64,000 nucleotides of DNA from Salisapilia sapeloensis CBS 127946 (taxonomy: Eukaryota; Protista; Oomycota): contig JAADVB010000026.1 in the NCBI GenBank assembly GCA_023334545.1, positions 53,086 to 117,085 of the forward strand, given 5' to 3'. The translations under genes and the position numbers were made by a program. Below, in pieces: positions 18,001 to 41,077 of this stretch. Position 1 is the stretch's first letter. Each line of letters starts with the position of its first letter. The notes below the pieces were generated by a model. It saw nothing but the letters and a program-made list of their open reading frames with translations. It had not been told where the DNA came from and ran no database searches.

Positions 18001-21000
18001 TTCGAAATGGACATAACTCTACCTTGCAGCTATATGGCAACAACCTTCCTGTCAAAACATGCAAAAGTGCATCCTGTCAAATCGGCCAAGTAAGAGTGAG
18101 TGGAAAGTTGATCAGTGGTGAAGAAGCAATTTGCTATTTGACATTGATTCAACCTGGAACATACAGTGTATCTTTATGGTGTGGAAGTGATCAATTCGAA
18201 ATAAAGACTCAACAGTTACGAGTATTGGATGCATTACGTGTGACCAAGATCTTGCCTCCGCAAGTCCCTATTAACTCAACAACGGACATTATCATCCTGG
18301 GTAGAAACTTCCTTGGGTACACTGATGTGAGATGCAGCTTTGGTGAAGAAGTAGCGGTAGTGAATGCAGAAGTACTGGATAATTCTCGAGTGCATTGTCA
18401 AGTTCCAAAGATGACGTCTCAAGTAATCATGACTGTATCTCTTACAGCCAGTCGCACGTCCAGCAACGCCTTACTTCTTCCAATCATTGCGCCTTTGCTG
18501 TTAGAATCACTTACGCCGTTGTTCGGAACTGCGGACGGTGGCTCGAATGTTGTGATAAACACAAAGAACACTGTACTAGGAAAGCACAGCAACATCTATT
18601 GTAACTTTGGAACAGAACAAGTCCCAGCTATCATTGTATCTGCAAACCAAATCGAATGCATATCGCCACCTCATACTCCAGGCATCCTCCACGTGACTAT
18701 CTCGGGCGATGCAAGTTCTGCGGAGGGAGCCTACTTGGTATATAGATACGTTGATAATGTGCTTATCGCAGAGCTTGCACCAAGCATCGCGTCTGTAAAC
18801 AACGGGCAGTCGTTCCTACTTACACTTTCATCCGATATTTCCAGTATACGCAGCATAGCTAGACCTTATTGTCTAGTCGATTCGATACGCGCCAACGCTG
18901 AGATTGTTTCAGGGATAGAAGTCATATGCCGCACTATGCATGGTCTAGTAGCAGGACGAAGCACACTTCAGCTATCTCTAAACGGAAAAGATCTTCTACA
19001 AGGCTCGCAGTCGTTTGTAGCTGTCGATCACCAACGTATCATGCACGTAGATCCTTCCGTTGGAAGCTCAGAAGGTGGAACGCACATTACACTCACCTTA
19101 GACAAATATTTGGAGCCTTCAGCGGCATATGAATGTCAGTTTAGATCTGCCACAAGAGAGCAAGTATCTCGTGCGGTCGTCAGCAGCTCCAAGTCCATCA
19201 TTTGTACAAGTCCTCCTAATCCGCAACTTGGAAGCACATTCATAGATGTCTTGCATAATGGAACGAGAATAACTTATGATGCAGCAACCTTCCGATATAT
19301 CCACGTACCTGTTCTAAGCTCTCTGCGTCCATCTACGATACAAGCGGTCAAGACTGGAACCATATCTTTAGTAGGCAATAACTTTGACAGCAGTGTCAAC
19401 TACTACTGTGAGATCGGTGCAACAAGTCGAGGGAGAGTTCGTGTCATAAGTCCATCTTTGCTGGAATGTAACTACTCTGAAGTAAGCCCTGGAAACTACA
19501 GCGTTTCTATATCTTGGAACGATCAAGAACGCTTTTACCTATCAGACAAGCTCCACGTTTCAACTGAAGTGTCTGTAAATTCAATAGCTCCTTTACATGG
19601 TGATCCAAAGCTACAAAATACTATTCGCATCATGGGCATTGGATTTGTATCATCTGCGAACTACTACTGCCGTCTGGATAAAGCCACAGTAGTCGCGAGT
19701 TTTATATCTACTTCTTGGATCGAATGCACGATACCTCCTTTCGATAAGAATACTTTATTCGAATACTGTACACCAGTAAACGTCTTGGTCGATTTAGAAG
19801 TGATATCTACTTCACATCGCTTCTGTTTCATCGAGCCACCATCGCTATCCAGTGTTATGCCTAGTGCCTCGAGCTTGGAGGGTGGGAATAGTATTAGCAT
19901 AGCTGGCGTCTACAACAGCTCGTTGGAGTACGAATGTGTTTTCGACACACTTCCAGTTAAGGCGGTGCTACATGATAATGGAGACGTTTTGCGATGCATA
20001 ACGCCAGAGATCTCACTCTCCACCACATCCAATATTTACGTCCAAGTCCATGATAGCAATATTCGATCAGAAGCCTTTCTGTTGAAACGCTTCGAGCAAC
20101 CAAATATACTGGATATATCTCCGTCGACTCTTCGATCATCAGGTGGAGAATCGCTCTTTATCCATGGTGAAAATCTTGCTGGCACAGGACAAGCTTTTAT
20201 TCAGATTGGACATGATACGACTGTAGCATGCCATATCATCTCATCACGATTAGTAGAATGTGTCGCACCTCCACATAGCTCCGGATATGCACTTGTGATG
20301 CTATCGATCAACAAATACGATTATATTAACAGCCAACTGGTTGTTTACTATGTAGATGATTTAGAAGCGCTCGTCGTTTCTCCCAGTATAGTGTCTTCCG
20401 AGGGAAGTACAACGCTCCATATATCGCTCGAGTTGAAGCATACAGGATTTGCTGCCGAGTGTCTCTTCCTTACAGACAGAAATGAATTAATTCAGCCTGC
20501 ATCAGTCGATTGGAAGCTACGTAGTGCTACATGCAGAACACCGTCATTTCTAAAGACGACTGTCGTCACCGTTGGTATGATTCTAGATGGCAAAATTCGC
20601 CTTTACGCAAGCTCTGTGCTGAAAGTGATCAAACCACCTTCTATCACCTCCATCTCTCCACTGATAGTGTCAAGTGCAGGGGAGACACCGATAACAATTT
20701 GTGGGGATCACTTTGAGAACGTTCAGCACTGTGTATTCAATCAAAAGGCATATATTAAAGTCCAAGACTCTCAGCCAGGATGCATTACATGCCAAGCGTC
20801 ACCTTCGTCTGACTTTGGTAAGAACGTTCAAGCAGTTTCTGTAAGCATTGCTGTAGATGATCACATTCGTTCCAATGAGATTGTATTGTCGTACTACCCT
20901 CCTGTCGAGATCCAACAAGTCATTGCACGCAAGACTGCTGGTCCGTCACGGATATTCACAGTCATTGGGTATAACTTTAAAGCAACCAAGGAGTTTCATT

Positions 21001-24000
21001 GTCGCATTGGTGAGGTGGTCTCATCTAGAGCAATCTTAAAGAGTGAAAACAGAGTAGAATGTGATATGCCTGTCGAAAGGATGATCAACGCTAGCCTTGG
21101 CGTTACCCTCAACGGAGTGGACTTCGCTGACTTTAAGCTAGACGAACAAGAGGACGCTTACGTTGCCATAGACGCCATTGTACCCTCCAATGGTCCTCGA
21201 CAAGGTGGCACGCAGGTCACTGTACATCTCTACAACGCACAAGCTTTGTATCAAATGGATGGTATTGTTAGCTACTGTGCTTTTGGAGAGCACAAAGTTC
21301 GCGCAGCACTTGAGAAAGATACTTTTACCTGTACCTCACCGGCATCGATAGACATTGGTGCCGCTGATTTCCAATTCCTTTGGATACAACAGAATTCTTT
21401 GCAACAAGAATATGCTCTACTGCCTGTTCATTTTGAATACGAGGAACTCCCGCTGCTGTCAGAGATTGTTGTGCATACGGATGATGCAACTGGAAGCCCA
21501 TTCGTTTATCTCTATGGCGATCATTTCAAACCAACGATGTCAGTGCGTCTAGGTACAGCCAGCGGTGTTTGGGGTGTAACGGCTAGTCAAGCGTCGACCA
21601 ACATGCTTGTAGTCTCTGATTTAGATCAACGTTTATCAGGAGCAGTTGCCATTTCCATCTCTACAAATGGTATTGATTATAGTCCTTCTCTCACATACTA
21701 CTTCCATCCGTATGCTAGTATCATCTCTGTGGTACCTGAAGAAATAGTTATCGACGACGCTCTGCAGTCATTTACTATAACAGTTCATGGATACGGATTT
21801 GAGGAATACATGCATGAAGCCATATTGTGCATTGTTGGAGAAGAACCCCCTTCGGTTGCAACGTTGGTTTCTGATACAAGGCTAGTGTGTCAAATACCGA
21901 GGTTGCCTGTTGGAGACTACCAATTCCAGCTTTCACTAAATGGTCATCACTTTAATAGTAACGAGAAACGATTGCTGTACAGAGAATCTGTAATGCTGTA
22001 TGGAATAGCGCCGTCGTATGGAGATGTCGGTGGTGGGACTCAAGTTACTATCCATGGGTCTGGCATCGATAGGAACTCGTCTAGCTTGTACTGCTACTTT
22101 GGCAGTCGATCATCTGAGCTGATCTCTATAAATGCTACAAGTGCAGTCTGCTATAGTCCTCCTCGCATGGATATAGGACCCGTGCCGTTCTTACTTGGTT
22201 TCATTAATGGCCAAACCTTGTCCAGTACGATCCCAATGGACTTTACGTATACTATGCGACCATCTATCTCTTCCGTGTACCCGGACACTATTATCGTTGA
22301 CCAAGTACATGTGATACGTGTGTCTGGGCAGAACTTTATCAACTCGCCAGTCTTGACATGTAAAATCGGAGACTCAACCATTTCTGCAAGCTACGTATCG
22401 TCTACAGAGATACAATGCCAAGGAAAGGTGTCGAGAGAAGCTTCAAGCGATGATGTACGAAGTCTACAAGTATCGAACAACGGATATGACTTCCCACCTA
22501 GTGAAAGCAGCATTTATCTCTTAAAGCCAATCGCAATAAGTGCGATGTATCCGTCTCGTGGACGTGTGAATGAAGAAAACGATGTAGTCATATGTGGTAG
22601 CGGGTTCCCGATCTCCAAACGTCTATCCTGCATGGTAGGTGAAAGCTTTATCGTTGAGGCACTGGCGCTATCAAACGTATGTATCCAATGCACATTCCCA
22701 TCATTCCGATACCCTACAAGAGTCCAAGTCATGTTCTCGGTAAATGGCGTCACGTATACGGATACCAGTCTGCCTTATACATACGAAGCAGAACCTATCT
22801 TATACAGCATCTATCCAAAGCTAGGTGCAATCGATGGTGGTACTCTTGTGCAAGTATATGGAGACGGCTTTACTTCATCCATGCCACTTTACTGTGTCTT
22901 TGGTGGAGTCGTCAGTCAAGCTGTCTATAGCTCTCCAACTGAACTCATTTGTGTATCCCCTCCAGCTATACCTGCGACTCCAAACACTGTCATTGTCTCT
23001 GTTTCTAAATTTACCGATGGAACGCAGCCTTCCGTTAACTTTAGTCCTGACGTTGATGAAGATGTAACGTTCACCTATGTCAACCTTCCAGCGCTCAACT
23101 CTTTCAGTCCAACGTTGACGCTTTGGAAAAAGCCCGTGCGTGTATGTGTCTGGACGACAGGTATGGAGATAACCGCGACTTCTGCTTGCAGGTTTGGGGA
23201 TATCAACGTTCCGATTGAGAGGGGGCAAGATGTAGACTTTGCGGAAGTTTGCTGCATGTCTCCTGAGCTACCCGTCGGAGATTATGTGCTGGAGGTGTCG
23301 AGTAATGGCCAGGACTTTAGTCAATCGAATCAAGTCTTTAGTGTCATGCCAGCTCCGCTTGTAACTACAACACAGTTGCATAACTCAAGTCGACACCTTT
23401 TGAGTATTTCTGGCAAGGACGTAGCTCAGATGGGTGATATCGACTGTCTGTTTTCTAATAGCCGAGTACGTGCAGTTGCTGTCACACCGATAGATGTAGA
23501 GTGTATTGCTCCTGAAGGTTTACCCATGTCAGAGCTTGAACAAGTTCTCGTGGTGTCTAGTAATGCAGTACACATTCAGGACACTTCCCTTGCTACTGTC
23601 ATCTCCACAAGTCCTACGGTCGGAGGAGCAAATGGTGGGACACTAGTTGAGGTACATGTAGACAAGCCACTGGAAGGCGATGACGTCATGTGCGTATTTG
23701 GAGAAATTGAATCTCCAGCGAATGTTACGAGCGGTACGAGCGTAGTCTGCCTGTCTCCATCTTATCTCCCAGGTTCCGTTCTCGTCCGCCTTCGTGTTAT
23801 CCTCGACGCCTACAATCAGAGTTCTCTCGAAACAACTTCAGTTACCGAGTTCACCTATCATGAAAACTTGTCTATTGACAGTTGCTCACCGACGCATGGT
23901 CCGCTAGGAGGAGGGACTAGGATCGAGCTGTATGGACGCTCATTTGTAGAAAAAATGACGTGTAGATTCGATATCTTCATCCCTCATTTGGATAAAGTTA

Positions 24001-27000
24001 TTCAGGTATTCGATGAAGGTATCTATATCAGTCATACAACGATGACATGTATAGCACCTTCGCTTATTGATCTCCATGCTGCATACGACACCTATGCGCC
24101 AATATCTAGAGAAGGGGTACCGAGCGCAAGTATTTCTGTCTCTATGAACGGAGTAGAGTTCGAAGCAAGTGACTGCTCATTTAAATTCGTTCACGGAGTC
24201 GGAGAGTTAGACATTACTCCACGTATCGGAGTGGTGGAGGGTGGTACTCCAGTTAATATCGAACTAGAGCATACGCCTCTTTATCCTGTAACCCACTGTC
24301 GGTTCGATCATAACACGACAGTGGAAGCAGTGCACGTATCGAACCAAGCAGTCGTATGCACTTCTCCACCTCATAGCATACATTCTACGAAGTTGGAATT
24401 AAAAGTGTCGGCATCAACGCTTGAGCCGGAGATTCAGGAAGTATACACAAGCTCATTAGAGAATGTACCACTTGAAGGCTTCTTTACTCTTATCCATCAA
24501 GGATCATCCACCAGACCGATACGATACGATGCAGATGCGACAGGAAACGATGGCTCTTCAATGTATGAGATTATATCAGAACTACCTGGCCTATGGGTCG
24601 ATTCTGTGCAGAGGACAGGACCTGATGGCATGGATGTGTACACGTGGAGAGTTGTATTCCAACGGCGCAGTGGTAACGTCGCCGAACTTGTACCAGATAG
24701 CAGTTTGCTAAAAGGTGAAGGAAATCTCGCACGAGTTTGGACAGTCCAAGATGGTCCTCGAAAGCGTCTTGACTCGGAGCATCAGAGAATAGAAATTCGG
24801 CAAGATGACCTCATTCATCCACACGCAGACCTTATTGTCGATCTAGATGATACGACGTCAGAGATCCAGTACGTGTCCATCAGCTCCTTCGCTCTCATCA
24901 CAGGCTCCTTTACTCTCACTTTCGGCGGATGGTCAAGTGCTCCATTGCAGTGGAATGTTCGTCCGACAGAAATGGCCGAGTCTATCGAGAGTCTTTTTCC
25001 CAATGTAGGTCTGAAAGTATCCCGATCAACCCCTTTTACTAATTATGGATTCGAATGGATTATCACATTCCCAGCATCGACAGAAGTAAAGCCCGTTGCT
25101 GTCGTAGTAGACAATGATCTCTTTTCCATGACTGGAGTTAATATGGAAGCTGGTCGAGTACAAATGGGTAAGATCCTATCCGAAGAACATTTCAAGCTAG
25201 AAACAACAAATGGAGCAATATCTAGCGAACTATCATGGGGTATGTCAAGTACAAGTTTGCTAGAAGTATTGATCAATGAGCTTAGTTTATCACCACTGGA
25301 TGTGTTCAAGACTGTCACGTCAGATGCAATCACATGGAATATTCAGTTCGACTACTTTAACAATGATGGAGCGATGCTGATGGCGAAAGAAGAAAATGTC
25401 TTAGATAGTATGCAGAAACTTCGTTTGAAGAATTATCCAACGGACGCGACAAAGATGTCAGGATACTTTCAGATATCACTCGATGGAGTGGTGTCAGATC
25501 CCGTGGATGTATTAGCTAGTGCCTTCGACCTACAATCCGCTATTCAGAACCTAGTAGTACCTCATATGAGTGGGGTTGTCGTAGCAAAGTCTGTCTCATC
25601 AACTAGCTATACCTACGATATCACTTGGAGCGAAGTGGCTGGAGATGTAAATAAAGTGCAAGTGCTTCTGACAAGTATCACTGGAACAAGTGTCGTTGCA
25701 CAGGTACAAACGCTTCAAGACGGAACCTATAGTCCTCTTGGTGGCTATTTCCAGATCCATACAAAGGACTATGCATCGAGCGACGTATCCTACGATGGAG
25801 ATGAAATGGCTATCAAACAAGCAGTTTCCACTGCATTCGAGTCCGCTGTTGCAAAGGTGACTAAATTAGCTTCTTCCGCTGGCTTTACATGGTCTGTGGA
25901 ATTCGAATCAGCGATTGATACCGAACTACTAGACAGTGTGTCCGTTACAACTATAGATCTACATGGAACGGATGCACAGGCTAGCTTGTCTGTTGTCGAC
26001 ATTGGTGCATCTATGGTGGTACCAGTAGCTGTGACGACGAACGAAGTCGATTATTCTCATCGAGCAGCTTTCTTCACGTACACACAAAAGCTCCAAGTAC
26101 ATTCACTAACACCGTCATCTGGTCCTACACTCGGAGGAACTCCAATTATCATTCATCTACTTGAAACTTACAGTCACAACGAAATCTTTTGTCAGTTTGA
26201 GAATGCTGTAGTGTCCGGTAGAATCATTACACCACTCCAAATCCATTGCATCACGCCACCTCAACCTCCAGGATACATGGACGTAAGGATCGGTGTTAAT
26301 GCTCAACATTTCGATACGTATGCAGGAACTTTTTTATACCGCAATGATATCTCTGCAGCTCTGGAGCTGTATCCACATCACGGTCCAGTTACTGGAGGTA
26401 CCACTGTACATATCATCGGAGTATTGTTCACACCCCAGAACGAGTACACTTGCAAATTCGACGAGACGATAGTCCAAGCAAGCTTTGTAAATGACACCCT
26501 GATCTTCTGTACTTCTCCTCCCGTATCTTCCACGATCAAAGTCAACGTTCGGATATCTGAAAACGATCATGACTATACTGCACCAACGATGACGTTTCAA
26601 TACGATGAACCTCTCTTCGTCACTTCCATCTACCCTAGTTCTGGTGAAATGGAAGGTGGAAACAACGTGCAAGTCGTTGGTGGACCATTTATCTACGGTC
26701 GAAACGACTATTTTTGTCGGTTCGGAGAGTCCGTCGTACCTGCCATTACGCTCACTTCGAGTACTTTAGAATGCCCAGCTCCAAACATTACGCCAGTTCG
26801 TGAAGTACAAGAGATTAAACTCGCGGTACCGATCTTTACACCTGCCGTGATACGTACTGAAATATCAGCTACCCCACGGTTACCGACAATACAACGGTTG
26901 TGGCTGAAACATCAAGAGCAACAGCTTGAAGTACGTGAATTAAGGATATTCGGAGACGACATACCGACGATCTATCAAGTTACTATGCAATCTCGCTCTT

Positions 27001-30000
27001 TCTCTGGAGATGAATATCGTATTCGGACAAGAGCAGTGTCTTTGGAGAATGAGATTCAGGCAGTTCGACTGACTGCAACCTCATATATAGGTGGTACGTT
27101 TTCTTTGAGCATGGAAGGACGAACGACGTCTCCCATTCGATCGTATGCTACTTCACTAGAAGTAGAAAAAGCACTACAATCTCTCCCAAACGTTGGAGCT
27201 GTGAAAGTACAAAAGACGGAGCGAGATAGTCTCGAAGGTTGCTATTGGGAGGTTGAGTTCATCGATCGTGTAGGAGATCTCCCGTTGCTTGAACTCCAGG
27301 TCTTGACACTTGAAGATTCAGGCACCAACGATCTCGCGATTGATATTGTCGAAGTAGTAAAAGGAGCAGGAGGACCTTTAGGTGGTACATTTGATCTACT
27401 TGTTGATCAGACATGGACATATACGTTGCGATATGATGCCTCAGAAGAAGAAATTGTGTCGTTGCTAGGAGAGAATGAAGCAGATAGTAGTGAACTGCAT
27501 GTTACTCGGGATGGACCGTTCCTAAACAACGACTATGAATGGACGATCGAGCTACCAGGTATCCCAACGGCAGATCGGGAAATGAGTGTTGATGGACAGA
27601 AGCTCATCGGAGGAAATGATGCAATCGTCATCGACATTCAGAATCAGGGTACACGAGGCACGCAACAGCATATATTTACTGGACAATCAGAAGGCGACTT
27701 CAAATGCGAAGTAGATGGAAAGGTGTCAGCTCCTATCCCTGTAGATGCATCTGCCGAAGCGTTTGCATTAGCTTTTGATGAAAACGCTTTCGGAGAGATT
27801 CAAGTCACAAAGGAAAGCGATGGCTCATGGAAAATGACGTTTGTGGAATGGGCAGGTGATGTGCCACTTATGAACTGTGGGCCTGATCAAGGCGTACAGA
27901 CAATTGTTCAAGGAAATGGGCAAGGTCTTTCTGGTACCTTTAGACTCTCTATCCTGGGTGAATGGAGTCTACCTATCGACTATAACGCCAATGTTGATGC
28001 AGTGAATGAAGCACTATCTACAATATCAGTAGCGGACAGCATAACTATTTCAGAAGTTCAAGTGAATGTGAATGGTGGAAAGAAATGGGAGTTGACATTC
28101 TCCAGTATGCTTGGAGATGTACAGGACTTAAACTCGGATAGCTCTACTTTAAACGGTTGCAACCCTATAGTTGTACTTGACAGAGTTCAGAGTGGAAATC
28201 AAGTAGGTGGATCTATTACATTATACGATGAGAAGAATCATAAAGTCGACTTGCCAGTGGATGTTAGCACAGCAAAGCTTCAATCTGCTCTTGTAGATAC
28301 CTTTTCAATACCAGTAGCAACTATTGATAAGATGGAAGCTTTGTCTGCCAAAGGATCAGTCTATAGAATAACGTTTGAAGCTGGATCAACAAGCATTCCA
28401 GACTTGGAAGTTAGAAGTGATGAACTAACTGGTGCTGGTGCTCAAGTATCTTTGTCTATCGTACAGAGTGCATCTGTGCCAACAAGCGGATCTTTTACGC
28501 TTGCGTATGGAGGCATTCGATCTGCACCGTTGAGTTGGAACGTATCTGCTGGTGATATGGCTCAGACATTACAATACATGCAGTCCATTCCAGATGAAGT
28601 CGTTCTTGTAGATCGATATGAAGGCACAGGTGGTTATGAATGGATCATTACATTCCCGTATGACTTGATAGATCCTTCGGAAATACCAAGTCTGCGGTAT
28701 GAAAACACAATAGCTGGTAGAGACATTGAAATGGGGATAGAGATCATCCATGAAGAGTCCTATATACTGAATGGCACATTCTATATGGAAATCGACGGAA
28801 GTAGATCGAATAAGCTACACACAGAGAACGAAGATCGAGTCATAGAAGATGAAATCAATCGGATGTTGCCAACTGCTAATGTATCCGTTATCTCCACTCG
28901 AATCAACAACGTCATCTCATGGAAGATAGAATATCATTCTCTTGAAACAGTGGCTGCTCTACCAACGCCTCCAACAATTGATATTGATGTCATGACAGGA
29001 GAAGATATTGAGACAAGTTCCAAAGTTGTATCTTCACCGACTTCCAATGTACTACAGCGACTTACGATTTATTCAGCGGACGATCTTCCATTTGGTGACT
29101 TTAGTATCAAATGGAAAGGGAAGTCGGCTTTGCAATCCGCTCGAGCAGACATGACTGCTGCAGAATTAAGAACAACTCTAGAGTCTATACCAGGTATGGG
29201 TCGAGTCCAAGTAGAAAGATTCCCTGTGGACAACGCATATGGCTTCGTATGGTTCGCTCTTTTGAAGGATGCAGATGCTTCCGAGACAGACAAAATGGAA
29301 GTAGAATTCACTAGTGCTAACTCTCCTTCTCTCGTTGTAGAGACTGAGGTATACCCTTCGACTATTCCTCGTATTCACGGTCAGTTTGCGATTCGACATG
29401 GATCGCTATGCGAAGAGGTAGCATTCGGAGGGTACTGTTCACCTGCCGAAACAAACTTGTTATCTCTGGACGTATCGAATGATGCATTCGAAAAGCAATT
29501 AGCTCGATTACCGAATCTCCAAGGAACGCAAGTAAAACGTAAAGTTTCTATTCCGTCTATCGAATACGTCTGGAACGTCATACTTCCTCTATCTCTCGAA
29601 GACTGCCCTCTGTTAGAAATAATTGACGAGCTGCTTGCTACTGATGCAGACATAGTCTCTATCCGTCGACTTCGAAAAGCATCCGACCTATCTGATCTAC
29701 AGGTCGCTTTAGAAATCACGTCGAACCTCCAAGACTACACTTCCAACGGTCTGGTCTATCGCTACACGCCGTCGGTCAACGTCTCTTCCATTTATCCAAG
29801 TCACGGACCTCGAATCGGAGGTACAGAAATTCTTGTACGTGGATTTAACTTTTACAATCTCTCTTCACTCCGCTGTCGATTCGGTACTGCCATCACGTCG
29901 GCAACATACCTCAACAAGACACACTTGCTATGTACCTCTCCCAGCACTACTGCCGCTGGAGTTATAAGCCTACAAGTAGCGAACCATGGTCTAAGAGGTA

Positions 30001-33000
30001 ATGCGACGTTCTCCAGCGACGAAGTAGAGTACACGTACGATAAGGAAGTCACGATCACGAACGTCATGCCGTCGCTTGGTCCTACCACAGGAAACTTTTC
30101 AGTCTTCATCAGTGGAGGTCCATTTGTCCACACGAATGAGATCCGCTGCCAATTCGATGAGACTGTCGTACAAGCGGAATGGCATAGCTACTCGGAGATC
30201 TCGTGCATGGCACCACCGCATCCAGCAGGTATCGTGGGCTTAGAAGTGACATTAAACGATCAGGACTATTCACGATCCAGAACCGCCTTCACCTTTTACA
30301 AAGAGCAAGGCATTTCGCGTATTGAACCTGTCTTTGGTCCGGCGTGGACAACTGGAACGGAAATAGTAGTGCATGGTACAAACTTTGTCAACTCTTCCTT
30401 ACTCTCATGCAGATTCGGCTACATCACAACGCCAGGTACATTCGTAGATGAGTCAACTATGGTCTGTCTTTCGCCACGACTGCCAGCGTATAGTGGAGGT
30501 CTTCATGCAGTTCCCTTGACAGAGCACCGAAATGAGTACGCTGATCCATCCCATGGCAGCATCTACCTCTTCCCGACTGCACATTTCTATCCACAATATT
30601 ATAGTCGACTCGTTTCCCTTGAAGTGTCTAATAACCAGCAAGACTTTACGACTGGCGGTGTCAACTACCTCTATTACGACGACGCTGTCTTGTCCGAGAT
30701 TTATCCCAAGTCCTCCTACGACACCAACGCTCTATCCCTCTTTGCCCTCGGCCGACATTTTATCAACTCGACACACCTCACGTGCAGACTAGGTACACAA
30801 CAGTACAAGGCAGTGTACATCACATCTGAGTTACTCCTATGTCCGATCCAACGGCCAAGAGCACATGAAGATACGCGGGTGGGGATAAGAGACAGATGGG
30901 AATCTCATGCACTTTTCGAAGTTTCCAACAACGGGAAAGACTTTACCAGTAGCCACTTGAGCTTTAACTTTAGAGGTCCATGTCCTACTGGTTACTTTTG
31001 TCCGGATGAGTTGCAAGGTAAAAGCATGGTTTGTCCCAAGGGAACGTTCTGTCCTGGTCAAGGCAATCGGAACTCGACGCTGTGTCCTCGTGGAACGTAC
31101 CAGCCACAAACAGCTCAAGCAAGCTGCCTTCGCTGTCCTGTCGGGTATCATTGTCCACACGTTGGGATGCACGTTCCACGCATCTGCCCTGCTGGATACG
31201 TATGCGCTACTACAGGCATTGAAGATGCCGTTGTGCCTTGCCCAGGTGGACACTTTTGCTTGGAAGGCACAGCCACATTTTCCATGACATGCTCTCCACC
31301 TGAAAAAACAAGTCGAATCATGGTTTCATCAGCATACTCAGGCGATACAATCACAAGTCGTAGTACAGACATAAATCCTTTGCAGCGAGTCATCGGATCT
31401 CGAAAGAGCGGTTGCTGGAATAATGAAACATTGGATTTTGGACTGCAAATGAGCAGGCACCCAAATCGATTCTGGTCTGAACGTCGACAGCTTCCTCTAT
31501 CCGCTGATGCCATCTACAGTCCTATACGAGGTCGCTTCTGTCTAGACGATACATGCTTCCGTTTGCAAGGAGATGAGTTCGTAGATGTCGTGGACGAAGT
31601 CTTTGACTACGCATCGACTGACTTTGCTCTAAGAAGACCGCTGCCATGTCCAGCTGGAAGCTATTGTCACCCAGGCACAGCAGCCAATAGCACGTCCCTG
31701 CAGAACTATGCCATGCCGCAACCGTGCTTTGAGAGCATGTACTGCCCGGAAGGAAGTGATTCGCCCATGGGCTTTGGAGAGTGTGCGCCAGGCTTCCACT
31801 GTCCATTCGGTACAAGACTCCCGTGCCCAGCCGGGTCCTTTTGCCCTACTACTGGACACACGTTTCCCGTCTCGTGTCCTCCTGGTACTTTCAACGGAAT
31901 GGTATCCCAGACATCTTGTACAGACTGTCCCGTGGGCTACATTTGTCCTGGATTCGGTCGTCTACTACCAGCCATGTGCCCTCCAGGCTACGTCTGCAGC
32001 AAGAGAGCTCTGTCGTCTCCTAACTATCTCTGTCCGAAAGGATTTTACTGTCTCCAAGGTACAACAACGTCGGATGGCTTCCGAAATGACACGAGACTCC
32101 GTCCTTATCCATGTCGACCTGGTACCTACTGCCTTAAAGGTGTCGTAGCAGACACAGTCGTCCATGGAGACTACAGATATCCTCAAAACTGCACCGAAGG
32201 CTTCTACTGCACACTCGGTTCGACGTCGCCTCTTGGCTCTGGCATGTGTCCTCCTGGCTTCACCTGTCCATCCGGTACAGCCGTTCCGATCCCGACAGAG
32301 AAGGGCAAGTTCGCGCAGAGAAACGGAACGATCGAAGCTGCGGAGTGTTCACCTGGATACTACGCTCCGACCATCGAGTCCAAGACATGTATCCCTTGTC
32401 CGCCTGGAACGAGCTGTGGAGACGATGGCATGTCTGTCGCAAAGATCTGTGAACCAGGAACGTATCGTGGAAGTCTAGAGGCCGACGGTGTCTCTTGTCT
32501 CGCTTGTCCACAAGGAACGTGGTCAAAGAACTGGGAGCTACGTGGGATAGAAGAATGCACTATTTGTCCTCCTGGAACAGTCTGTCCTATGGACGGCATC
32601 ACGTATCCTTGTACAGAAAACGATTTACCTCATATCTTCACACCAGTTGATCAAGACTTGTCTTTTGTCGAGTGTCTCGAGAAAGGATCTGCGTACTTTT
32701 ACGGCGTCTTATTAGAGCCTTGGATAGACGAGTATGGCGCTGGTCCGCATCTCTTACCGTCTCGAGACGGACGATGCTACCATAACGCACAGCCGCATGG
32801 GTCGATATTATACCAGAGACTATCAGACTATCACGGTCCTCTCTACGAAATCGCCACTGGTCTTCCACATCAGGGATATGGTGACGTCGGTCAGACGCCT
32901 GTTCCGAACATCTTTGATCGTGGTTCTCTTGCCATCGACCTTCCTGTTTCTCAAATCTATGACTCTGCTCGGAATTGCACAAGAGGTTTCTACCATCAAG

Positions 33001-36000
33001 ACCAGTGGTTTCCAGGAACATGTGAAGCAGACATCATCTGTGCTCCATCCGATACTACTCAAACATCCGAGTTGCATGTTGCGCAAGCTCAGCCATGTCC
33101 AGAAGGCTACGTATGTGACCAAAGCACGACTGCTGTGAATGCACTAGACCATCGCTGTCCTGGTGGGTACGTCTGTGATGCCGGGACGTCTCCGGACTTG
33201 AGCTTGGAATCTCCTCGAGGCCAACTAGACCAGCTCTGTCCGGCAGGATACTATTGTGAAGACGGGACGGCCGAGTCTCAGAAGAAGATGTATACATGTC
33301 CAGCAGGATACTTTTGTCCGACTGGAACGAAGAACCCGTACCTAGGGACGATGGCGAACGATGCATTGCGCAGGAGGTTGACGAAAGAAGATGCAGATCC
33401 ATTTCGAGACGTTAACTATACCAAGTACCTTGCCGAAGGTGATATCCGCATCGTCTCCGCTCATGACTTGCATTGCTTTAATGGTATCGATGACGATCTT
33501 AAACAGATCTTCCGAACATATACTCGTACAAGTGATGGAAAGCGTATTGTCATGAATGAAGCGCTACGTAATGACTTGATATGCGCTCGTGACCACAAGT
33601 GGAGATTGATGCATCTCGGAATGGAACGGAACGAATGTGACTGTCCGTACCAAGTGAAACTCGCGCATCAAGTCTATCGCTTATGGAAGTGCACAGTCGA
33701 GCCATCCCAACCGCCTCTTCTTTCCTACGACGCGAATCTGTACGGTTGGAAGCAAGCCTACAATTCCGAACAACAATGTGTCTTCCCTGCTACATCTGTG
33801 CTACAAGCAGTTGACCTCGGCAAGGTATTAGATAGCACTGGTGTCATTTTTGAGGTTATAACCGGTAGCAAAGAAGCATTCTACTCATATGACATACTCA
33901 AAGCAGAGGTCGAGAGTCTGTATCAAATACAAGAGCTGCAGATTCCTGGAAGTACAGTTGAAATGGACAGTAACCTATATCATTTGCATCATGCTATCCA
34001 AAAGGTGGAGCAGCTTGGAGAAGAAGTACCTAGCGTATTGAATTATGATGATAGCTTGAATCTATTACGACCAGATGCATGTGAATGTGCGAATTTGCTC
34101 AAGTGTCCGAACGGAACAGAGTCGGCTGTCGGGTCTGACGACATCTACGACTGTGTCAAAACAGGTTCAGAGGTCTTGCAACGCATATCACCCATACCAG
34201 AGGACCATCCTCGTCTTGTCAACGGAGATAAGTACAAGGAACTGTCTGGTGTTGGAAGAGGAATCGGAAGTATACGTCTGCAACCAACGGAAGTAGCTGT
34301 TATCACGATCAATACGACGGGCATTCCCAGGAATCTCACATACGATGATCACTATCAGATCTCCATCTACACGGACTGCAAACCTTGTCCGACGCAATAT
34401 ACTTGCAACCTAGCACAGGATCCTATCGTATGCAAGTACCCGAATGACGACAATAGCACTAGTACGAAACTGTTCGACGACTGTATGGAAAGAGAAGAGG
34501 ACTACGATACATGCATCCACATGCCTTACTTTTGCAATGAAAGAACGCTTCTAACAGGACCATTGGAACTCGAGACGATGCTACCTGGTTGCTGCGAATG
34601 TGAGCGACGCCAAATGCCCTACTATTTCCAGGATAAAACCACAGATCTTGGGTATCCGGATAACAAGCACGGATATCTACAATTCAGTATCTCTGCGGTT
34701 CACTTAGTAGATGTAACGATCACAGTCGAGCTATTGCATGGTCTGTACATTGGTAGCTTTGCAGAGGAGTTTAGAAACGATCGATTCGACCTGACGATCT
34801 TCTCGCCGTCGCGTGGAAACTACGCGCCGTCTACACCGTCCATGAGATCCTTCTTTGCCGTCATGCAGAAAGAGACTTACGACAACAAGCTTATGTTACC
34901 TCTGAACCTACCTGAAACTCGACAACACATTGTCGGAACCAGTAGATTTAGATACGATATCGAATCCTCCATCTTTATCGATCGCATATCGGACATTATG
35001 ATCGGCGATCCACATCTTCCGAAAAAAAGAGGGTTTATTCGAAACACAGAGCAGAACGCAGTCGGAGATATCGTCGTAGCGCTCAATGAAAATGGCTCTT
35101 TAGAAGTAGATACCGACCACATTGTACCCCCGAACGAGTACTTTGGTCTGTATCCGATTCGAGACCCTCTAGATCGTGTGCTAAGGACTAATAGCTGGTG
35201 GACAGAAGAGCTAGAAGGCAAAGACTTTATCTCAGTCCCTTACTTTCCATTCTTCTCTAACTGCAGAGGCTTTGATTCCCATCTTTGGATCTCGAAACTA
35301 CTCGAGTCTCATCCAGATTGTACCTTCATTGACTATGATAAGACGGTGGAAGTGAACGAATATCCGTGGAATGAACAACTAGTACCGACGGCAGATAGCT
35401 GTTTAATCAACTACCATGTCAATGTGACGGATGTAAATGACAAGATGATTACTACAACAAGACAAAGAGGTATCAATCTCTCTTGTACGTATGAAGAAAA
35501 TCTCGAGGGTGGGTCCGACCGACCTCGGTGGTACGAAGCCTCAGAAGACACGACACTCTTCTACTTGACACGAGACCCCATTTCTCCGGATCAATTTACG
35601 AGTCCATTTAATAGCGACGATTGGGGTCGTACGGACATTCTCGAGTCATTCTTAGGAACAGATAGTTTGATTCCAGTGACCATTGGAGCTGATGCAGGAC
35701 TGACACAAGTAGTCCCGAGAGAAGTGTACTTGAATCTAACCTATTATCAAGTGACACCAGGTAAGAAACGTCTGGTGGAAGCTTTTGTGAACTTTGGACA
35801 GTTGTGTACCGTTGCCAAGTCGACTGAGATCATCGCCAAGATGGCTCAGAAGGATATATACCCATGTTTGATCAGCAACGCGACGAAACAAATCGCTTCG
35901 TACGACTACATCTTGCAAGTCACTTGGCAACCACTCGATTGGTTTGCCTTGATGAATCTCTTCCAGTTCTCTGTCGACATTTACATTGGTTTCTTCTCCA

Positions 36001-39000
36001 TCGTTAGCTTGTTTAGTATTCTAGAAGGCGCATGCGTTTGGGTCATCAATCGTCTCTTTACCAAGATGAAGAGCCCTCCAAGGTCCCGACTACGCATCCT
36101 ACTCAAGAACATTTCTGCCCCATCTTCCTATGGCATCTGTCTCTTCATGATCCCTGTGTGGGCTATGATCACATTCGTCTACATTTGGTGGCATGGATTT
36201 GCATCAGAGGACCCGATACTAGAGCCAAGCGCCATATCCTTTGAAAGCACGCCAGGGAGCTGGTTAGATGTAATTGCACTCACCGAAGACCGTGTCCTCG
36301 GGTATAAACGAGGTCGAATCGGTGTCAGTCTCGCTACCATTGGTGCGTGCTTACTCTATCGAGGATCTACGCTCTTGATTCCGGAAACATTTGATAAACA
36401 ACCGGAGGATAATGCGTTTAAAGAAGTAGCGGGACCTACACCGACAGATCCTCTTGAGGTAAAAGACGAAGAGGAAGAAGACGACGAGTTCTGGGATACA
36501 CGTGCATGGAAGATCACCAACTTTGTCCTCATCACACTACTCTTCACGGCATGTTTACTTCCATTCTGGGAGTTCTCCTACTCGAAAGTCTTTACAGACA
36601 ACATCTATGGCTTCCTCGTGCTCTTTAAGATCGCCCGGAACGTCATTGAACTCGTACTCGAACGATTCTTACGAGAAAAACTACTTGTCATGCCATTTGT
36701 CACTGTCCTCTCCGCGACAGAAAGCACGATTTCGATGGGCTCCTCCGACTTTCTCGGCTATACCATGTTCTACTTTGTCAATCTAAGTCTCACCATCCTC
36801 GAACGTCTCTACTTTGCTCCTTTCATGCGATATGTGAGCTGTCAATGGGAGATCTGGCGCTTGATCATACGCAAGAAGCTCAAGAAACGACGTCGACGGA
36901 CGCGAGAACAGAAGATGCAAGAGGAAGAAGAGTGGCGACAGACTTGTGAAAAGCTCGAGAGTCAACTCTCCGGAGTCGAATCCGTGTTAGAAGCTGTTGC
37001 AGGGTATAGTATCGTCCTCATCGAGTTGTTCCTATCGCCTATCATACTTGCCTTCCAAGCTTTATTCAGCTACGAAACGCGCATGCCGTTCCTCTACGCT
37101 GTCAAGCACACAGACTTGCTCTACTACTCGCTCTTCTCTCTCTTTGTCATCCCCAGCAACCTCGTCATGAGTGCCTTCCAGCTAAGTACTATGGAACTCG
37201 TACATGGCTGGAAAGTATACGAGTACATCGCATACCAGAAGCATCGGTTCATGACAAGAGATACGCAGTGGCAGATGCATCATCCAACCAAAGATGAAAG
37301 CATCCACCCGGCCTTTCAAACATTAGATCTCTTGTGTTTCTCTTCCCAATACTACTTCCTGATAACCATGTATGCATTCGGGATATGGCTGACTGTCATC
37401 GGTGCAACGATCCTCCTGCGACAGCAGCATAGTCCTAATGGGGACTGGCTAACGCTTGTCATTATCATCGTCATCTTCCTTCTCGCTCGAGCTGTCGAAA
37501 AGTGTTGTGTCTACTTTGGTCTTAAATTCGGCATTTGGAAACCGAAGCAATTGGAAGGAACGCTTGATGATGAGATCGCAGCAAAGCTCGCACTAGGACT
37601 CGGTCGACAACTCGATCTCGAACGAGAGCGTCTGGAACTCCAAGCTCTCAACTCGGAAAGGTTCCGACATCGGTTCATGGAACGCAATCGACCGTGGATA
37701 CTGCAGCATCTCGTAGAGCTCTTTACACCACGCACACTACAGGCAGAAGGAGTAGATGGTAGACCGAACGCCGAAATGGTGAGAGACTTGTACCATGAAC
37801 TCGTGAACATGGGCGAAGGTCGACGTCTCCGAGATGATCGATCGGACGTATCCTCCGACTCATCCGATGAACTAGAGAAAATGAGAAGACAGTGGTCTAA
37901 AGTTCCCGTCTCTGGTCCATCAAAAGACATCATCTTGTACTGGTTAGCTCGAGCTCGTAAGCGGCGGACGTTTGGCAAGTTAATCGCAGGTATCATTGCA
38001 AAACAAAAGCAGTCTTCCTGTGCAAAATGTCAGCGTGATGAAACTGGTGGCTTTACGATGCTTGTCGGGCTCGCGAATGAACAAGGAACAAATCAAGATC
38101 CGAATGCTTTAGATCGATTGATTGATGGATTCGAAAACGAGTTTGGGGAAAACGAGATGGAAGCCGACTTGTGGAAAGCTTATTTCCGGAAACACGCGAC
38201 GTTCCTAACGCTATGCAACGTCTGTACGTCAGCACTTGAGCAAAAGCGACTGGAAAGAGCGGTCAAGGCACCTGTCGCTCAGCATATCCTACGTGCAGAT
38301 GAGTTCTCATCGTCGGAAGATGAAGAAGACGAAGCACCATTCGATCCGGTCGTTGTCACTCGAAATTCCGTCGAAGGTAGAGTTCTGTCCAAGTGGCTAC
38401 TAGCTGCCCGCAAACGTCTCGGTGGCGCCTTCCCCCGTCCTCATGCACAAGCAGAGATGGAAGCTTATGCCAAACGTTTACGAGCGAAGCGGACGAGAAA
38501 AGGAAAGACAGCGCATGTCGATTCTGACGACGAAGACCCTTCTGTGCACTGGCGACTAAACCTGAACGAAGCGACAAGAGCGCTAGCGCTCCGGTGGCTA
38601 TGGGAAGCCCGAGATGTCCGCTATGCTGCGTTTAAAGACCAGGCAAAAGAGCTTCGGGTGCAACTAGCAGATGCATGTAGCAAGATCTTAGCAGTAGATG
38701 ACTGGTTCTATGGGAAGGAACTTCGATTAGGAGGTGCTCAGTTCATGCAAGAAGGAGAGGAATTACTCCAAGTAGAGAAGAAGGAAGATGAAGAGATGAA
38801 ACAGAAGATTGCGCAGTGTGAACGAGACCTCGAAGCATTTGAGTCGAAGAGGAGGAAGATTGTCGAAGAGGAGAAAGTAGCGTTTGATGCGTTGCTGGTA
38901 AAAGCAAAGGCGGATGTAGAAGTCAAGCTTGAGGAACGTGAGAAAGAGTTACTGTTAAAACGACAGGAGAAAGAGAAAGAGTTTGTCGAGATGCAGCGAG

Positions 39001-39392
39001 AGGCACGAGAAGCGAATGAACTCACGCCGGCGATGGTGAATGAGCACAAGGCGTTCCTGGACAACATGACTACGGAACGGAACGCAGAGCTCGACAAGGT
39101 ACGCTCCGACGCGAATGAAAAGGAACAGCAGAAGCGCGATGCCTTCAACAAGAAGCTCCATCAGGCAGAAGCAAGCATTGAGAACCGTCGAGCACTGACA
39201 CACCATCGCATCCTCGAGATCCGGAAGGAACGAATGAACGCTCACGTGCTACGGGAGAAGGGATGGCAAGCGAAAGCTAGTGGGTGGATGGACAAGGCGA
39301 GTCGGAAGATGCAGTCCAAGGCCAGACAAGATGCGGATGCCGCTGCTGCAGACAAGAAGCGACGGAAGAAAATAGTCTTAGGATCATCGTAG
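9057..39392 (+). CDS. Giant (~10,050 aa) membrane protein: signal peptide, LamG-like, many IPT/TIG repeats, EVQ-type modules, Cys-rich GCC2_GCC3/Ephrin_rec_like repeats, ~10-11 TM, coiled-coil tail
   Basis: Exons 9057-9406, 9468-10194, 10252-13057 and 13114-39392. Introns of 61, 57 and 56 nt are all GT-AG and frame-preserving, giving 30,162 nt (10,054 codons including stop). Signal peptide '[14 protein letters not shown]'. Recurrent 'P..G...GGT.V.I.G.xF......C.FG' TIG pattern, 'CPxG(Y/F/H)(Y/F)C' repeats, and a hydrophobic block at about 35970-37520. Confidence 0.88.
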
Positions 39393-39468: not shown

Positions 39469-41077
39469 TTACGTCTTGGATTTGTTTATCCTTGGCAGCC
39501 ATATCTTGACGGAAAAGTCGGCAGAGGCAGACGCAAGGATCGGTTCTGACGGATGGAAGTCGACGCAGTACACGCGATCGCTATGTGCATCAATCTTCTG
39601 CACCAGTTGGGCCGAAGGATGGCCATTGGAAACGTTGAGACTCACATCATGCAGGTAGATACGGTTGTCCGCACTACCTGTCGCTAGCAACGACATCTCA
39701 CGCGACTGATCAGTGCGCTCCGAGTCCTGGAAGTCACTGCTGTCATCTTCCTGCAGCGACTGCTGGTGCCGACGATGCTTGGACGCACCGAGCTGATACT
39801 TGGTGCCGTCGCCACGGAAGAAAGAGCTCTTGATCGGCCAGTTCTTGTTTTTGTGACCTGTGACAGAGAATGATAGCTGCATCTGATCCTGACCATGCGA
39901 GCTACTGATGAGCTTAGCACGACGGTCGTACACGCGCAGGATGTTGTCGTAACTGTTCACAGCCAAGAACCGTCCTTCCTCATCACTTCCGTACTTTTTA
40001 GACGCTTGTACATGTGAGATTGCGTGTCCACCGTTATCATTCAGCTGGGATAGCTCCTCGATACAAGCACCCATGCGAACGTCCCACGTCTTGAGCATAC
40101 CTTTACTATCGCCCGTGATCACGTACTGACCATCAGGCGAGACGTACAACGAATTGATCATCGCCTCATTCTTCCACGTCCTAGATGTGTACACAGATAA
40201 GAGCATGCATATCGACGTCGGGACGGTAGAGACTTACGAGTACGAGTCGGCACGAGTGTCCATGTGATGGATACACCTCTTGCTCGTGCCGAAAAAGTAA
40301 TCAGCATTATCTATTTTCACATACAATAAGAAGCAAGTCTGTCGTATCGCTGATGAGGAGTGGAACCTGCTTCACTGTAGGAAACGCACTGGACGAGCCC
40401 TGGGACTTCACAACTATGCAGCAGCTCGTTCGTCGTGACATCCCAGCGCTTGACAGTGTGATCATAGGACGCAGATAATAGCTGAGAGCTGTCATTCGCC
40501 CAGCTGACGTCAATAACAAGTTGGTTATGACGAGATAGAGATGCTAGTTGCTGCTGATGGAATTTCGTCGTCACGTCCCATAACAAGACGCGTTTATCGA
40601 GCGATCCGGACGCCAGAAGCTTGCCACAGGGAGAAAACTTGGCTGTATAGACTGCCCCCGTGTGGGATCGTAGCGCAGCTTTTTCAAACAAGGTCCGTGG
40701 ATCATTCTCTTCGATATTCTCGTCCGACGCAGCAGGAAACTCCTTTGTACTTGGCGGAGACTGACCGGTCTGGCGAGATGACGTCGACAGCAGCTCTTGC
40801 ATCGGAAACGGGTCCGATGTCACATGCACACTTTCCAGTCTAGCACGATGCTTTAGTCTCCACTTAATCTAGAAATCACATCACGTCCGTACTTGAGTGT
40901 AAGTTCATAGACCGACCGCTTCAGATCATGATTCTCCTGCTCCAATTTCTCCACACTCTGTTTCAACTGCTTATTCTCCTTTGCTAGTGCCTACATCCGA
41001 CCTAAGACGTCAATTCACAAGCCTAGTCGATCGGGACGCACCTCATACTGCGCTCGAACGTCAGGCTCCGAAGCCAT
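39469..41077 (-). CDS. WD40-repeat protein with N-terminal coiled coil (multi-exon)
   Basis: WD repeats: SHTGAVYTAKFSPCGKLLASGSLDKRVLLWD, RHNQLVIDVSW...SASYDHTVKRWD, AHSDRVYCVDFHPSEPILASASADFSVKIW. First exon MASEPDVRAQYE|GTGCGT, followed by heptad-like AKENKQLKQSVEKLEQENHDLKRSVYEL. Internal exon boundaries are approximate. Confidence 0.85.

What the first reader, a model, noticed from the sequence alone, without database searches (positions are those of the whole stretch)
35970..37530. Unassigned ~10-11 TM domain of the giant protein, a possible channel or transporter-like module
There is a run of hydrophobic helices ([113 protein letters not shown]). They are interrupted by a basic/charged loop ([15 protein letters not shown]) and a motif-like stretch [16 protein letters not shown]...RW. 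It does not look like a 7TM GPCR to me, and I cannot assign it to a family.
Basis: partly seen in the sequence, partly recalled or inferred. Interest (0 to 1): 0.7.

Follow-up and report, generated by a model that had tools for sequence, protein, structure and literature searches.

The report
TMEM16/OSCA-like membrane core of giant protein
The end of this giant oomycete surface protein crosses the membrane eleven times in a conserved, unnamed module whose predicted shape most resembles the TMEM16/OSCA/TMC channel-scramblase proteins, so a huge adhesion-type rod may be wired directly to a channel-like core.

Summary
Window 35898-37700 (residues 7575-8175 of the 8738-aa ORF 13176..39392) encodes an 11-helix membrane domain. 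Hydropathy, the positive-inside rule and a confident AlphaFold2 model (pLDDT 89, pTM 0.88) agree.

No Pfam model or solved-structure sequence matches it. An exhaustive profile search found 1491 cluster representatives (407 at E<=1e-30). The named ones are oomycetes, diatoms, a pelagophyte, Cafeteria, Cantina, a cryptophyte, Prasinoderma and the jakobid Andalucia. The domain usually lies after IPT/TIG and cysteine-rich repeats.

Best reading: an undescribed, very divergent TMEM16/OSCA/TMC-like module with an OSCA-type extra first helix that carries the ectodomain. Channel or scramblase activity is inferred only.

The parts
13176..39392 (+). Giant uninterrupted ORF (8738 aa) that carries the domain. 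About 28 IPT/TIG domains, then Ephrin_rec_like cysteine repeats, then the 11-TM domain and a tail.
   Evidence: ORF list; Pfam TIG E 2e-238 and 1e-36, Ephrin_rec_like.
35898..35972 (+). Conserved extracellular juxtamembrane segment (Y4, L18 and F22 kept in at least 93%).
   Evidence: Alignment A3 and conservation table.
35973..36056 (+). TM1. Proposed equivalent of the extra N-terminal helix (TM0) of OSCA/TMEM63; links the ectodomain to the core.
   Evidence: AF2 helix 26-53. The OSCA3.1 alignment starts at model residue 39 / chain residue 8. The following loop has 6 K/R and 0 D/E.
36090..36197 (+). TM2 (core helix 1), with G79 98% conserved.
   Evidence: TMEM16 alignments start at model residues 53-56.
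36285..36377 (+). TM3 (core helix 2) with the invariant G-R-x-G motif (G139, R140, G142).
36378..36497 (+). Acidic, poorly conserved, low-confidence cytoplasmic loop (16 D/E).
   Evidence: pLDDT 50-68; loop charge count.
36498..36578 (+). TM4 (core helix 3), W204-K205 at its start and E225-x-S227 at its end.
36603..36740 (+). TM5 and TM6 (core helices 4-5). Amphipathic, with conserved charges (100% acidic at position 260, P266 96%).
   Evidence: AF2 helices 236-258 and 261-281; conservation.
36750..37064 (+). TM7, a long cytoplasmic helical hairpin holding the basic [15 protein letters not shown] stretch, and TM8 (core helices 6-7). Conserved E361/E365 at the cytoplasmic start of TM8.
   Evidence: AF2 helices 285-329, 336-358, 360-389.
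37107..37205 (+). TM9 (core helix 8) with E433 (99%) at its cytoplasmic end.
37206..37349 (+). Cytoplasmic signature: G-W-K-x-Y-[DE]-Y...R-F-x-x-R-x-x-R-W, D466, D477, then C-F-S-S-Q entering TM10 (R454, W458, S482, Q484 invariant).
37344..37529 (+). TM10 and TM11 (core helices 9-10) with invariant D516 in the short outer loop.
   Evidence: AF2 helices 483-508 and 519-544.
37608..37697 (+). Conserved post-membrane cytoplasmic helix S-E-x-F-R-x-x-F...N-R-x-W (W600 invariant).

Best explanation
Window 35898-37700 encodes the membrane-embedded core of a very large, previously undescribed family of protist surface proteins.

Shown: it is an 11-helix domain with the N-terminus outside and the C-terminus inside. 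It is conserved from oomycetes to a cryptophyte, a green alga and a jakobid. It normally follows IPT/TIG and cysteine-rich repeats and precedes a cytoplasmic tail.

Supported but not proven: helices 2-11 adopt the ten-helix fold of the TMEM16/OSCA/TMC (TCS, or anoctamin) superfamily. Helix 1 is an extra OSCA/TMEM63-like 'TM0' that connects the giant ectodomain to that core.

Inferred: the amphipathic, charge-bearing helices 4-8 correspond to the groove or pore helices TM3-TM7 of TMEM16. They would form a hydrophilic path for ions and/or lipid head groups. That path would be gated by force or ligand binding on the rod-like ectodomain pulling on helix 1. The conserved cytoplasmic face may add regulation (E361, E365, E433, E442, R450, R454, W458, and the basic hairpin). 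The window protein would then be a receptor and a channel- or scramblase-like effector in one chain.
For: Reality and topology:
- Uninterrupted 8738-aa ORF.
- Eleven helices by hydropathy and by AF2, with positive-inside loops.
- AF2 with 85 sequences gives pLDDT 89.2 and pTM 0.88, and all five models score 88-89.

Family:
- The word search finds Phytophthora (58-60% identity) and Aphanomyces (41-43%) giants.
- The exhaustive profile search finds 1491 representatives at E<=1e-3, 920 at E<=1e-10 and 407 at E<=1e-30.
- Named members are Odontella, Corethron, Aureococcus, Cafeteria, Cantina, Pythium, Thraustotheca, Guillardia theta XP_005821996.1, Prasinoderma and Andalucia.
- There are two deep clades, both present in stramenopiles.

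Fold:
- The model built from only 8 sequences gives TMEM16 chains in its top ten, with the same register (model about 55-544 against nhTMEM16 about 152-627).
- Z rose from 7.5 to 9.6 as the model improved.

Conserved acids sit at the cytoplasmic ends of the helices equivalent to TMEM16 TM7 and TM8. That is where TMEM16 binds Ca2+ (residue list in PMC5868767).
Against: - Foldseek gives no hit at E<=1e-3 (best 0.2; TM-scores at most 0.21).
- The best Z (9.6) has rmsd 6.4 A and lies below the level (about 13) that the tool itself says helical models can reach without true kinship.
- None of 76 members hits Pfam Anoctamin, TMC or RSN1_7TM among the families listed at E<=10.
- An 85-sequence profile finds no TMEM16, OSCA or TMC chain among PDB sequences.
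- The ESM Atlas shape search was run only on the poorer model and gave nothing above TM 0.26.
- The helix equivalent to TMEM16 TM6 carries a conserved Arg (R303) rather than the Asn/Glu pair, so a TMEM16-type Ca2+ site is not shown.
- I could not get model coordinates, so no residue-level superposition, pore or dimer analysis was possible.
Confidence: 0.5

Rival explanations
1. The domain is a new polytopic fold unrelated to TMEM16/OSCA/TMC. It serves mainly as a strong membrane anchor and oligomerisation platform that couples the giant adhesin-like ectodomain to the conserved cytoplasmic tail. Signalling would go through the tail, with no conduction.
Against: A simple anchor needs one helix, not eleven held at 21-62% identity over more than 1400 clusters. 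Amphipathic helices with conserved charges inside the bundle (TM5, TM6, E225, position 260, R140) are typical of transport or channel proteins. The full-length collinear structural matches come almost exclusively from one superfamily, in three of the four VIA-align runs; the few others (Myo4p, Tetrahymena telomerase) are shorter or have very high rmsd.
Confidence: 0.27
2. It is the stramenopile counterpart of the alveolate CRMP receptors: a cysteine-repeat ectodomain plus a C-terminal multi-pass core that forms heterodimers and triggers regulated exocytosis. It would work as a contact sensor for secretion, for example at zoospore encystment.
For: The overall layout is the same. Both have Ephrin_rec_like/EGF-type cysteine repeats directly before a C-terminal multi-TM 'conserved core' (PMC9815656 and PMC9670195). 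The family has two ancient paralogue clades present in the same organisms, which recalls the CRMPA/CRMPB pairs.
Against: CRMPs are described with 9 TM helices (5 in Tetrahymena), not 11. In the CRMP sequences deposited with PMC9815656, CFSS does not occur at all. FSSQ and GWK/GWR occur only in unrelated, mostly ectodomain contexts. No TIG domains are reported for CRMPs. This was only a motif look-up: I had no CRMP sequence under a reference, so no alignment or fold comparison was made.
Confidence: 0.08
3. It is a polycystin-1-like 11-TM receptor-channel, or another TRP/PKD-type module.
For: It has eleven helices, an outside N-terminus and a huge Ig-like-repeat ectodomain, as in polycystin-1 (own knowledge).
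Against: There is no PLAT, GPS/GAIN, PKD_channel or Ion_trans Pfam hit. No TRP/PKD chain is in any VIA-align list, and only TRPM3 appears, at Foldseek rank 40 with E 2.2.
Confidence: 0.03

Closest known systems
TMEM16/anoctamin scramblases and channels (nhTMEM16, TMEM16K, TMEM16A/F, Ist2)
   Different: No sequence-profile similarity. This domain has an extra N-terminal helix, so the N-terminus is outside. There is no cytosolic N-terminal ferredoxin-like domain. The Ca2+-site residues on the TM6 equivalent are not matched. The domain is fused to a roughly 7,500-residue ectodomain. High rmsd (6-10 A).
OSCA/TMEM63 mechanosensitive channels
   Different: No RSN1_TM, PHM7_cyt or RSN1_7TM Pfam hits. 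The loop where OSCA has its folded cytosolic domain is here a short acidic disordered stretch. OSCA has no large ectodomain.
TMC-1/TMC-2 mechanotransduction channels
   Different: No TMC Pfam motif. In TMC the tether is a separate protein complex, whereas here the tether-like rod is part of the same chain.
[quoted passage not shown] 2018, PMC5868767)
   Same: They are uncharacterised protist and oomycete branches of the same superfamily.
   Different: Those proteins are 700-1000 aa and were named from their Pfam domains and tree clustering. The paper mentions no TIG domain or giant ectodomain. The present family hits none of those Pfam models.
Apicomplexan/ciliate CRMPs
   Same: A cysteine-repeat (Ephrin_rec_like/EGF) ectodomain followed by a conserved C-terminal multi-pass core, with paired paralogues.
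   Different: CRMPs have 9 (or 5) helices. The signature motifs of this family are absent from the published CRMP sequences. CRMPs have no TIG array.
Polycystin-1
   Same: 11 TM helices behind a very large repeat ectodomain (own knowledge).
   Different: No GPS/PLAT/PKD channel signatures and no convincing structural match.

Membership tests
TMEM16/OSCA/TMC (TCS / anoctamin) superfamily | Ten-helix membrane core, superposable and collinear with solved members. | tested here: inconclusive
TMEM16/OSCA/TMC (TCS / anoctamin) superfamily | Sequence-profile match to Pfam Anoctamin (PF04547), TMC (PF07810) or RSN1_7TM (PF02714), or to solved members. | tested here: not met
   None of these families appears among those listed for 76 members at E<=10. 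The A3 profile against PDB sequences found no TCS chain. HHsearch-level profile-profile comparison could not be run.
TMEM16/OSCA/TMC (TCS / anoctamin) superfamily | OSCA/TMEM63-type topology: an extra TM0, N-terminus outside, C-terminus inside. | tested here: met
   There are 11 helices, an ectodomain of TIG and cysteine repeats before TM1, and positive-inside loops. The OSCA3.1 alignment begins in TM1/TM0. This is a prediction only.
TMEM16/OSCA/TMC (TCS / anoctamin) superfamily | TMEM16-type Ca2+ site (Asn/Glu on TM6, Asp/Glu pairs on TM7 and TM8). | tested here: inconclusive
   E361/E365 (TM7 equivalent) and E433 (TM8 equivalent) are 92-99% conserved at the cytoplasmic ends. The TM6 equivalent carries R303 instead. 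I had no coordinates to test proximity.
TMEM16/OSCA/TMC (TCS / anoctamin) superfamily | Dimeric assembly with one pore or groove per subunit; ion or lipid permeation. | not testable with these tools
   No multimer prediction, coordinates or assay were available.
CRMP (cysteine repeat modular proteins) | Conserved core of EGF-like/Ephrin_rec_like repeats plus a 9-TM domain alignable with Tg/Pf CRMPs. | tested here: not met
   Ephrin_rec_like repeats are present. However, there are 11 helices, and in the CRMP sequences of PMC9815656 supplements 4 and 6 CFSS is absent while FSSQ and GWK/GWR occur only in unrelated contexts. This was a motif-level test, not an alignment.
Polycystin-1 / TRP-PKD channels | GAIN/GPS site, PLAT domain after TM1, TRP-like six-helix pore module. 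| tested here: not met
   No such Pfam hits. No PKD/TRP chain is in any VIA-align list, and only TRPM3 appears, at Foldseek rank 40 with E 2.2.
7TM GPCR / adhesion GPCR | Seven-helix bundle; 7tm Pfam families. | tested here: not met
   There are eleven helices. The only GPCR-related Pfam hit is GPR_Gpa2_C, in 3 of 76 members at E>=0.018. GPCR chains match only a 70-80-residue hairpin.

The most novel reading that the evidence does not exclude
The family is a single-chain 'tether plus channel' mechanotransducer. A rod of dozens of TIG domains, probably more than 100 nm long, would pull directly on the TM0 helix of a TMEM16/OSCA/TMC-type pore. This would be an ancient arrangement, spread over at least four eukaryotic supergroups, and the functional analogue of the animal tip-link/TMC apparatus. 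In oomycetes it could sense surface contact by zoospores or hyphae.
Probability: 0.15. Interest if true: 0.9.

Novelty: new variant of a known kind. Interest (0 to 1): 0.72.

Why it matters
The TMEM16/OSCA/TMC superfamily supplies the hearing channel, plant osmosensors and the main lipid scramblases. How force reaches these proteins is still debated.

A large family (more than 1400 clusters at 50% identity) would offer a natural experiment if the core is covalently joined to a giant adhesion-type rod. The tether, the TM0 lever and the pore would be in one gene.

The finding would also:
- give a first functional handle on some of the largest proteins of oomycetes, diatoms and other protists, which databases now label only 'IPT/TIG domain-containing' or 'hypothetical';
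- define a new domain family worth adding to Pfam/InterPro;
- extend the known reach of the superfamily to a jakobid, a cryptophyte and an early-branching green alga.

If the fold link is wrong, the domain is an even newer 11-TM fold of wide distribution.

Tried and rejected
- **Pfam.** I scanned the whole giant protein, the TM region, the tail, the upstream 2 kb and relatives. Only TIG and Ephrin_rec_like were found, and nothing lay in the TM domain. One call failed on a size limit and was repeated with a smaller alignment.
- **PDB sequence searches.** A single sequence and an 85-sequence profile found nothing. The juxtamembrane ectodomain and the tail also found nothing.
- **Foldseek against PDB, both models.** No hit at E<=1e-3.
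- **ESM Atlas.** The feature search returned only unnamed oomycete and chlorophyte clusters. The shape search, run on the first, poorer model, gave nothing above TM 0.26.
- **First model (8 sequences, pLDDT 65).** Its wide VIA search was dominated by hairpin matches, with TMEM16A only at rank 21. It was superseded by the 85-sequence model.
- **CRMP link.** I could only search the paper's supplementary sequences for motifs. No CRMP sequence was available under a reference, so no alignment was made.
- **Literature.** Searches for TIG plus oomycete, giant protein, TMEM16 or ephrin found no description of this family.
- **Exon junction.** It was read from the DNA only.
Full report
**Context.** The finding lies in a single uninterrupted ORF, 13176..39392 on the + strand, 8738 aa.
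- Pfam finds about 28 IPT/TIG domains and Ephrin_rec_like cysteine repeats in the ORF. It finds nothing after residue about 6900.
- The ORF has no signal peptide.
- The preceding ORF, 10321..13074, carries eight more TIG domains. It is separated from the giant ORF by a GT...AG interval, 13058-13113 (56 nt), whose removal keeps both frames in register. I read this from the DNA and did not join the exons in any tool. The gene is therefore even longer than the ORF.
- Neighbouring genes are eukaryotic (WD40).
- The best relatives are Phytophthora (58-62% identity) and Aphanomyces (41-43%) giants. The window therefore comes from an oomycete outside Phytophthora.

**Observation.**
- Single-sequence hydropathy, alignment-averaged hydropathy and DSSP on the AlphaFold2 model together give eleven membrane helices. 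In domain numbering (residue 1 = nt 35898 = ORF residue 7575) they are 26-53, 65-100, 130-160, 201-227, 236-258, 261-281, 285-~305 (continuing as a cytoplasmic helix to 329), ~360-389 (preceded by a return helix 336-358), 404-436, 483-508 and 519-544.
TM5 and TM6 are amphipathic.
- Eleven helices fit an extracellular TIG/Cys-rich N-terminus and a cytoplasmic coiled-coil tail.
- The loops predicted to be inside are the basic ones: 6 K/R and 0 D/E after TM1, and 16 K/R between TM7 and TM8.

**Family.** No Pfam model matches the region convincingly (best E 0.2), and no PDB sequence does.
- The word-index search with the whole protein found only oomycete giants plus two 7000-aa metagenomic proteins at 25-27% identity. 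A search at domain length found fragments.
- The family scans and word searches left the protein open, so I ran the exhaustive profile search. It found 1491 50%-identity representatives at E<=1e-3, 920 at E<=1e-10 and 407 at E<=1e-30. The domain is always near the C-terminus of proteins up to 7900 aa.
- Cluster look-ups name Odontella and Corethron (diatoms), Aureococcus, Cafeteria, Cantina, Pythium insidiosum, Thraustotheca, Guillardia theta (XP_005821996.1, 'IPT/TIG domain-containing protein'), Prasinoderma coloniale and the jakobid Andalucia godoyi.
- A FastTree of 85 domains shows two deep clades, and oomycetes, Cantina, Cafeteria and diatoms occur in both. The duplication is therefore old. 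No animal, fungus or land plant appeared among the few named members, but that sample is small.
- The 85-sequence alignment A3 (21-62% identity to the window) has seven invariant residues: R140, R454, W458, S482, Q484, D516 and W600. About 25 more are at least 90% conserved.
- Conservation extends beyond the membrane. About 230-430 residues of ectodomain directly upstream are shared, and within the stramenopile clade about 580 residues of tail are shared.

**Fold.**
- With eight sequences AlphaFold2 gave pLDDT 65 and pTM 0.70. With A3 it gave pLDDT 89.2 and pTM 0.88, with all five models at 88-89.
- Foldseek against the PDB gave no hit at E<=1e-3 for either model. TMEM16K did have the highest TM-scores in the list (0.19-0.21).
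- Apart from Myo4p (199 residues, rmsd 11.5) and Tetrahymena telomerase (194), the other rows in that list align fewer than 180 residues. Most are 45-80-residue helical-hairpin matches to the cytoplasmic TM7-TM8 arm.
- As a robustness check, the poorer 8-sequence model gave ten TMEM16 chains in its top ten with the same register. Its earlier wide search was the exception: hairpin matches dominated and TMEM16A was only rank 21.
- So three of four VIA-align runs, on two models built from different alignments, converge on the three branches of one superfamily, and Z rises as the model improves.
- The alignment register implies that the window's TM2-TM11 correspond to TM1-TM10 of TMEM16. TM1 corresponds to the extra TM0 of OSCA/TMEM63, which likewise places the N-terminus outside.

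**Limits of the fold evidence.**
- None of 76 family members gave a Pfam hit to Anoctamin, TMC or RSN1_7TM among the families listed at E<=10. The A3 profile finds no TCS chain among PDB sequences.
- The seven anoctamin-superfamily families defined by Medrano-Soto et al. are 700-1000-aa proteins named from their Pfam domains and clustering, and that paper mentions no TIG domain (PMC5868767). This family is not one of them.
- I therefore claim fold resemblance with moderate confidence, and homology only as the most economical explanation.

**Mechanism (inferred).**
- In TCS proteins TM3-TM7 line the ion/lipid pathway. Here the equivalent helices are TM4-TM8.
- These are the least hydrophobic helices of the domain and carry conserved charges: W204-K205, E225-x-S227, a 100% acidic position 260, P266, R303, E361 and E365.
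- E361/E365 at the cytoplasmic start of TM8, and E433 (99%) at the cytoplasmic end of TM9, occupy the helices and membrane side where TMEM16 binds Ca2+ (residue list). The TM6 equivalent has R303, and I had no coordinates, so a Ca2+ site is neither shown nor excluded.
- The ectodomain enters the membrane through TM1/TM0. The simplest model is that force or ligand binding on the TIG rod is transmitted through TM1 to the core. The invariant cytoplasmic linker, the post-membrane helix and the tail would provide regulation or cytoskeletal coupling.

**Rivals.**
- A non-conducting anchor or oligomerisation platform remains possible (confidence 0.27).
- The CRMP idea is attractive because of the shared cysteine-repeat-plus-multi-TM layout and paired paralogues. 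But CRMPs are described with nine (or five) helices. In the CRMP sequences in the supplements of PMC9815656, CFSS is absent and FSSQ and GWK/GWR occur only in unrelated contexts. That was only a motif look-up.
- Polycystin/TRP and GPCR readings find no support.

**Novelty and literature.** Full-text searches combining TIG with oomycete, giant protein, ephrin or diatom, or TMEM16/OSCA terms found no description of this family or this fusion. Source databases call the members 'hypothetical', 'IPT/TIG domain-containing' or 'transmembrane protein'. Atlas clusters annotated with Pfam 38.1 carry no family. I class it as a new variant of a known kind: a TCS-like core with TM0, fused to a giant adhesion-type ectodomain. 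If the fold link fails, it would be a new 11-TM fold.

**Housekeeping.** Earlier scan notes that I saw are first-reader notes on this same window. They agree on the overall architecture but did not alter my reading.

Noticed in passing
window 13058-13113: A GT...AG interval of 56 nt separates ORF 10321..13074 (eight TIG domains) from the giant ORF. Removing it keeps both reading frames in register (…LSA|A|[12 protein letters not shown]…), so the gene is at least about 9,650 aa. The giant ORF's own ATG at 13176 is internal.
   Followed up: partly
window 34593-35897: The roughly 230-430 residues of ectodomain just before TM1 are conserved in both clades of the family (for example 33% identity to Prasinoderma and 26-36% to diatom members). 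They match no Pfam family or PDB sequence. This could be a family-specific juxtamembrane (GAIN-like?) domain.
   Followed up: partly
window 37530-39389: The cytoplasmic tail (about 580 aa, coiled coil at the end) is conserved across stramenopile clade-A members (28-61% identity to Phytophthora, diatom, Cantina and Cafeteria proteins). It has no Pfam or PDB match.
   Followed up: partly
window 36006-36008, 36498-36500, 36513-36515, 37170-37172: The window protein departs from near-invariant family residues: S37 (G in 87%), T201 (P in 78%), I206 (R in 88%) and S425 (D in 89%). The Phytophthora orthologues keep R206 but also lack D425.
   Followed up: no
L001:2-2848: A 948-aa fragment of a family member (27% identity) lies on a compact, gene-dense eukaryotic contig from JGI metagenome 3300022937. 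It sits next to tRNA_anti-codon, TMF and ribosomal protein S3 genes, probably in a picoeukaryote genome.
   Followed up: no
P0154 (JGI metagenome protein, 2242 aa): This family member, which has TIG domains, is labelled 'Flp pilus assembly protein TadB' by its source. That is almost certainly an automatic mis-annotation of a eukaryotic gene.
   Followed up: no
alignment A4 members: Single members give isolated Pfam hits to ZIP (5.9e-05), CSG2 (7.8e-05) and Meckelin/TMEM67 (5.8e-04). Each hit occurs in only one of 76 sequences, so they are probably chance. The Meckelin hit is notable because meckelin also has a Cys-rich ectodomain followed by a multi-TM region.
   Followed up: no
window 39469-40206 (-): A WD40-repeat gene ends only 76 nt after the giant gene's stop codon, on the opposite strand. 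The two genes have convergent, tightly packed 3' ends.
   Followed up: no
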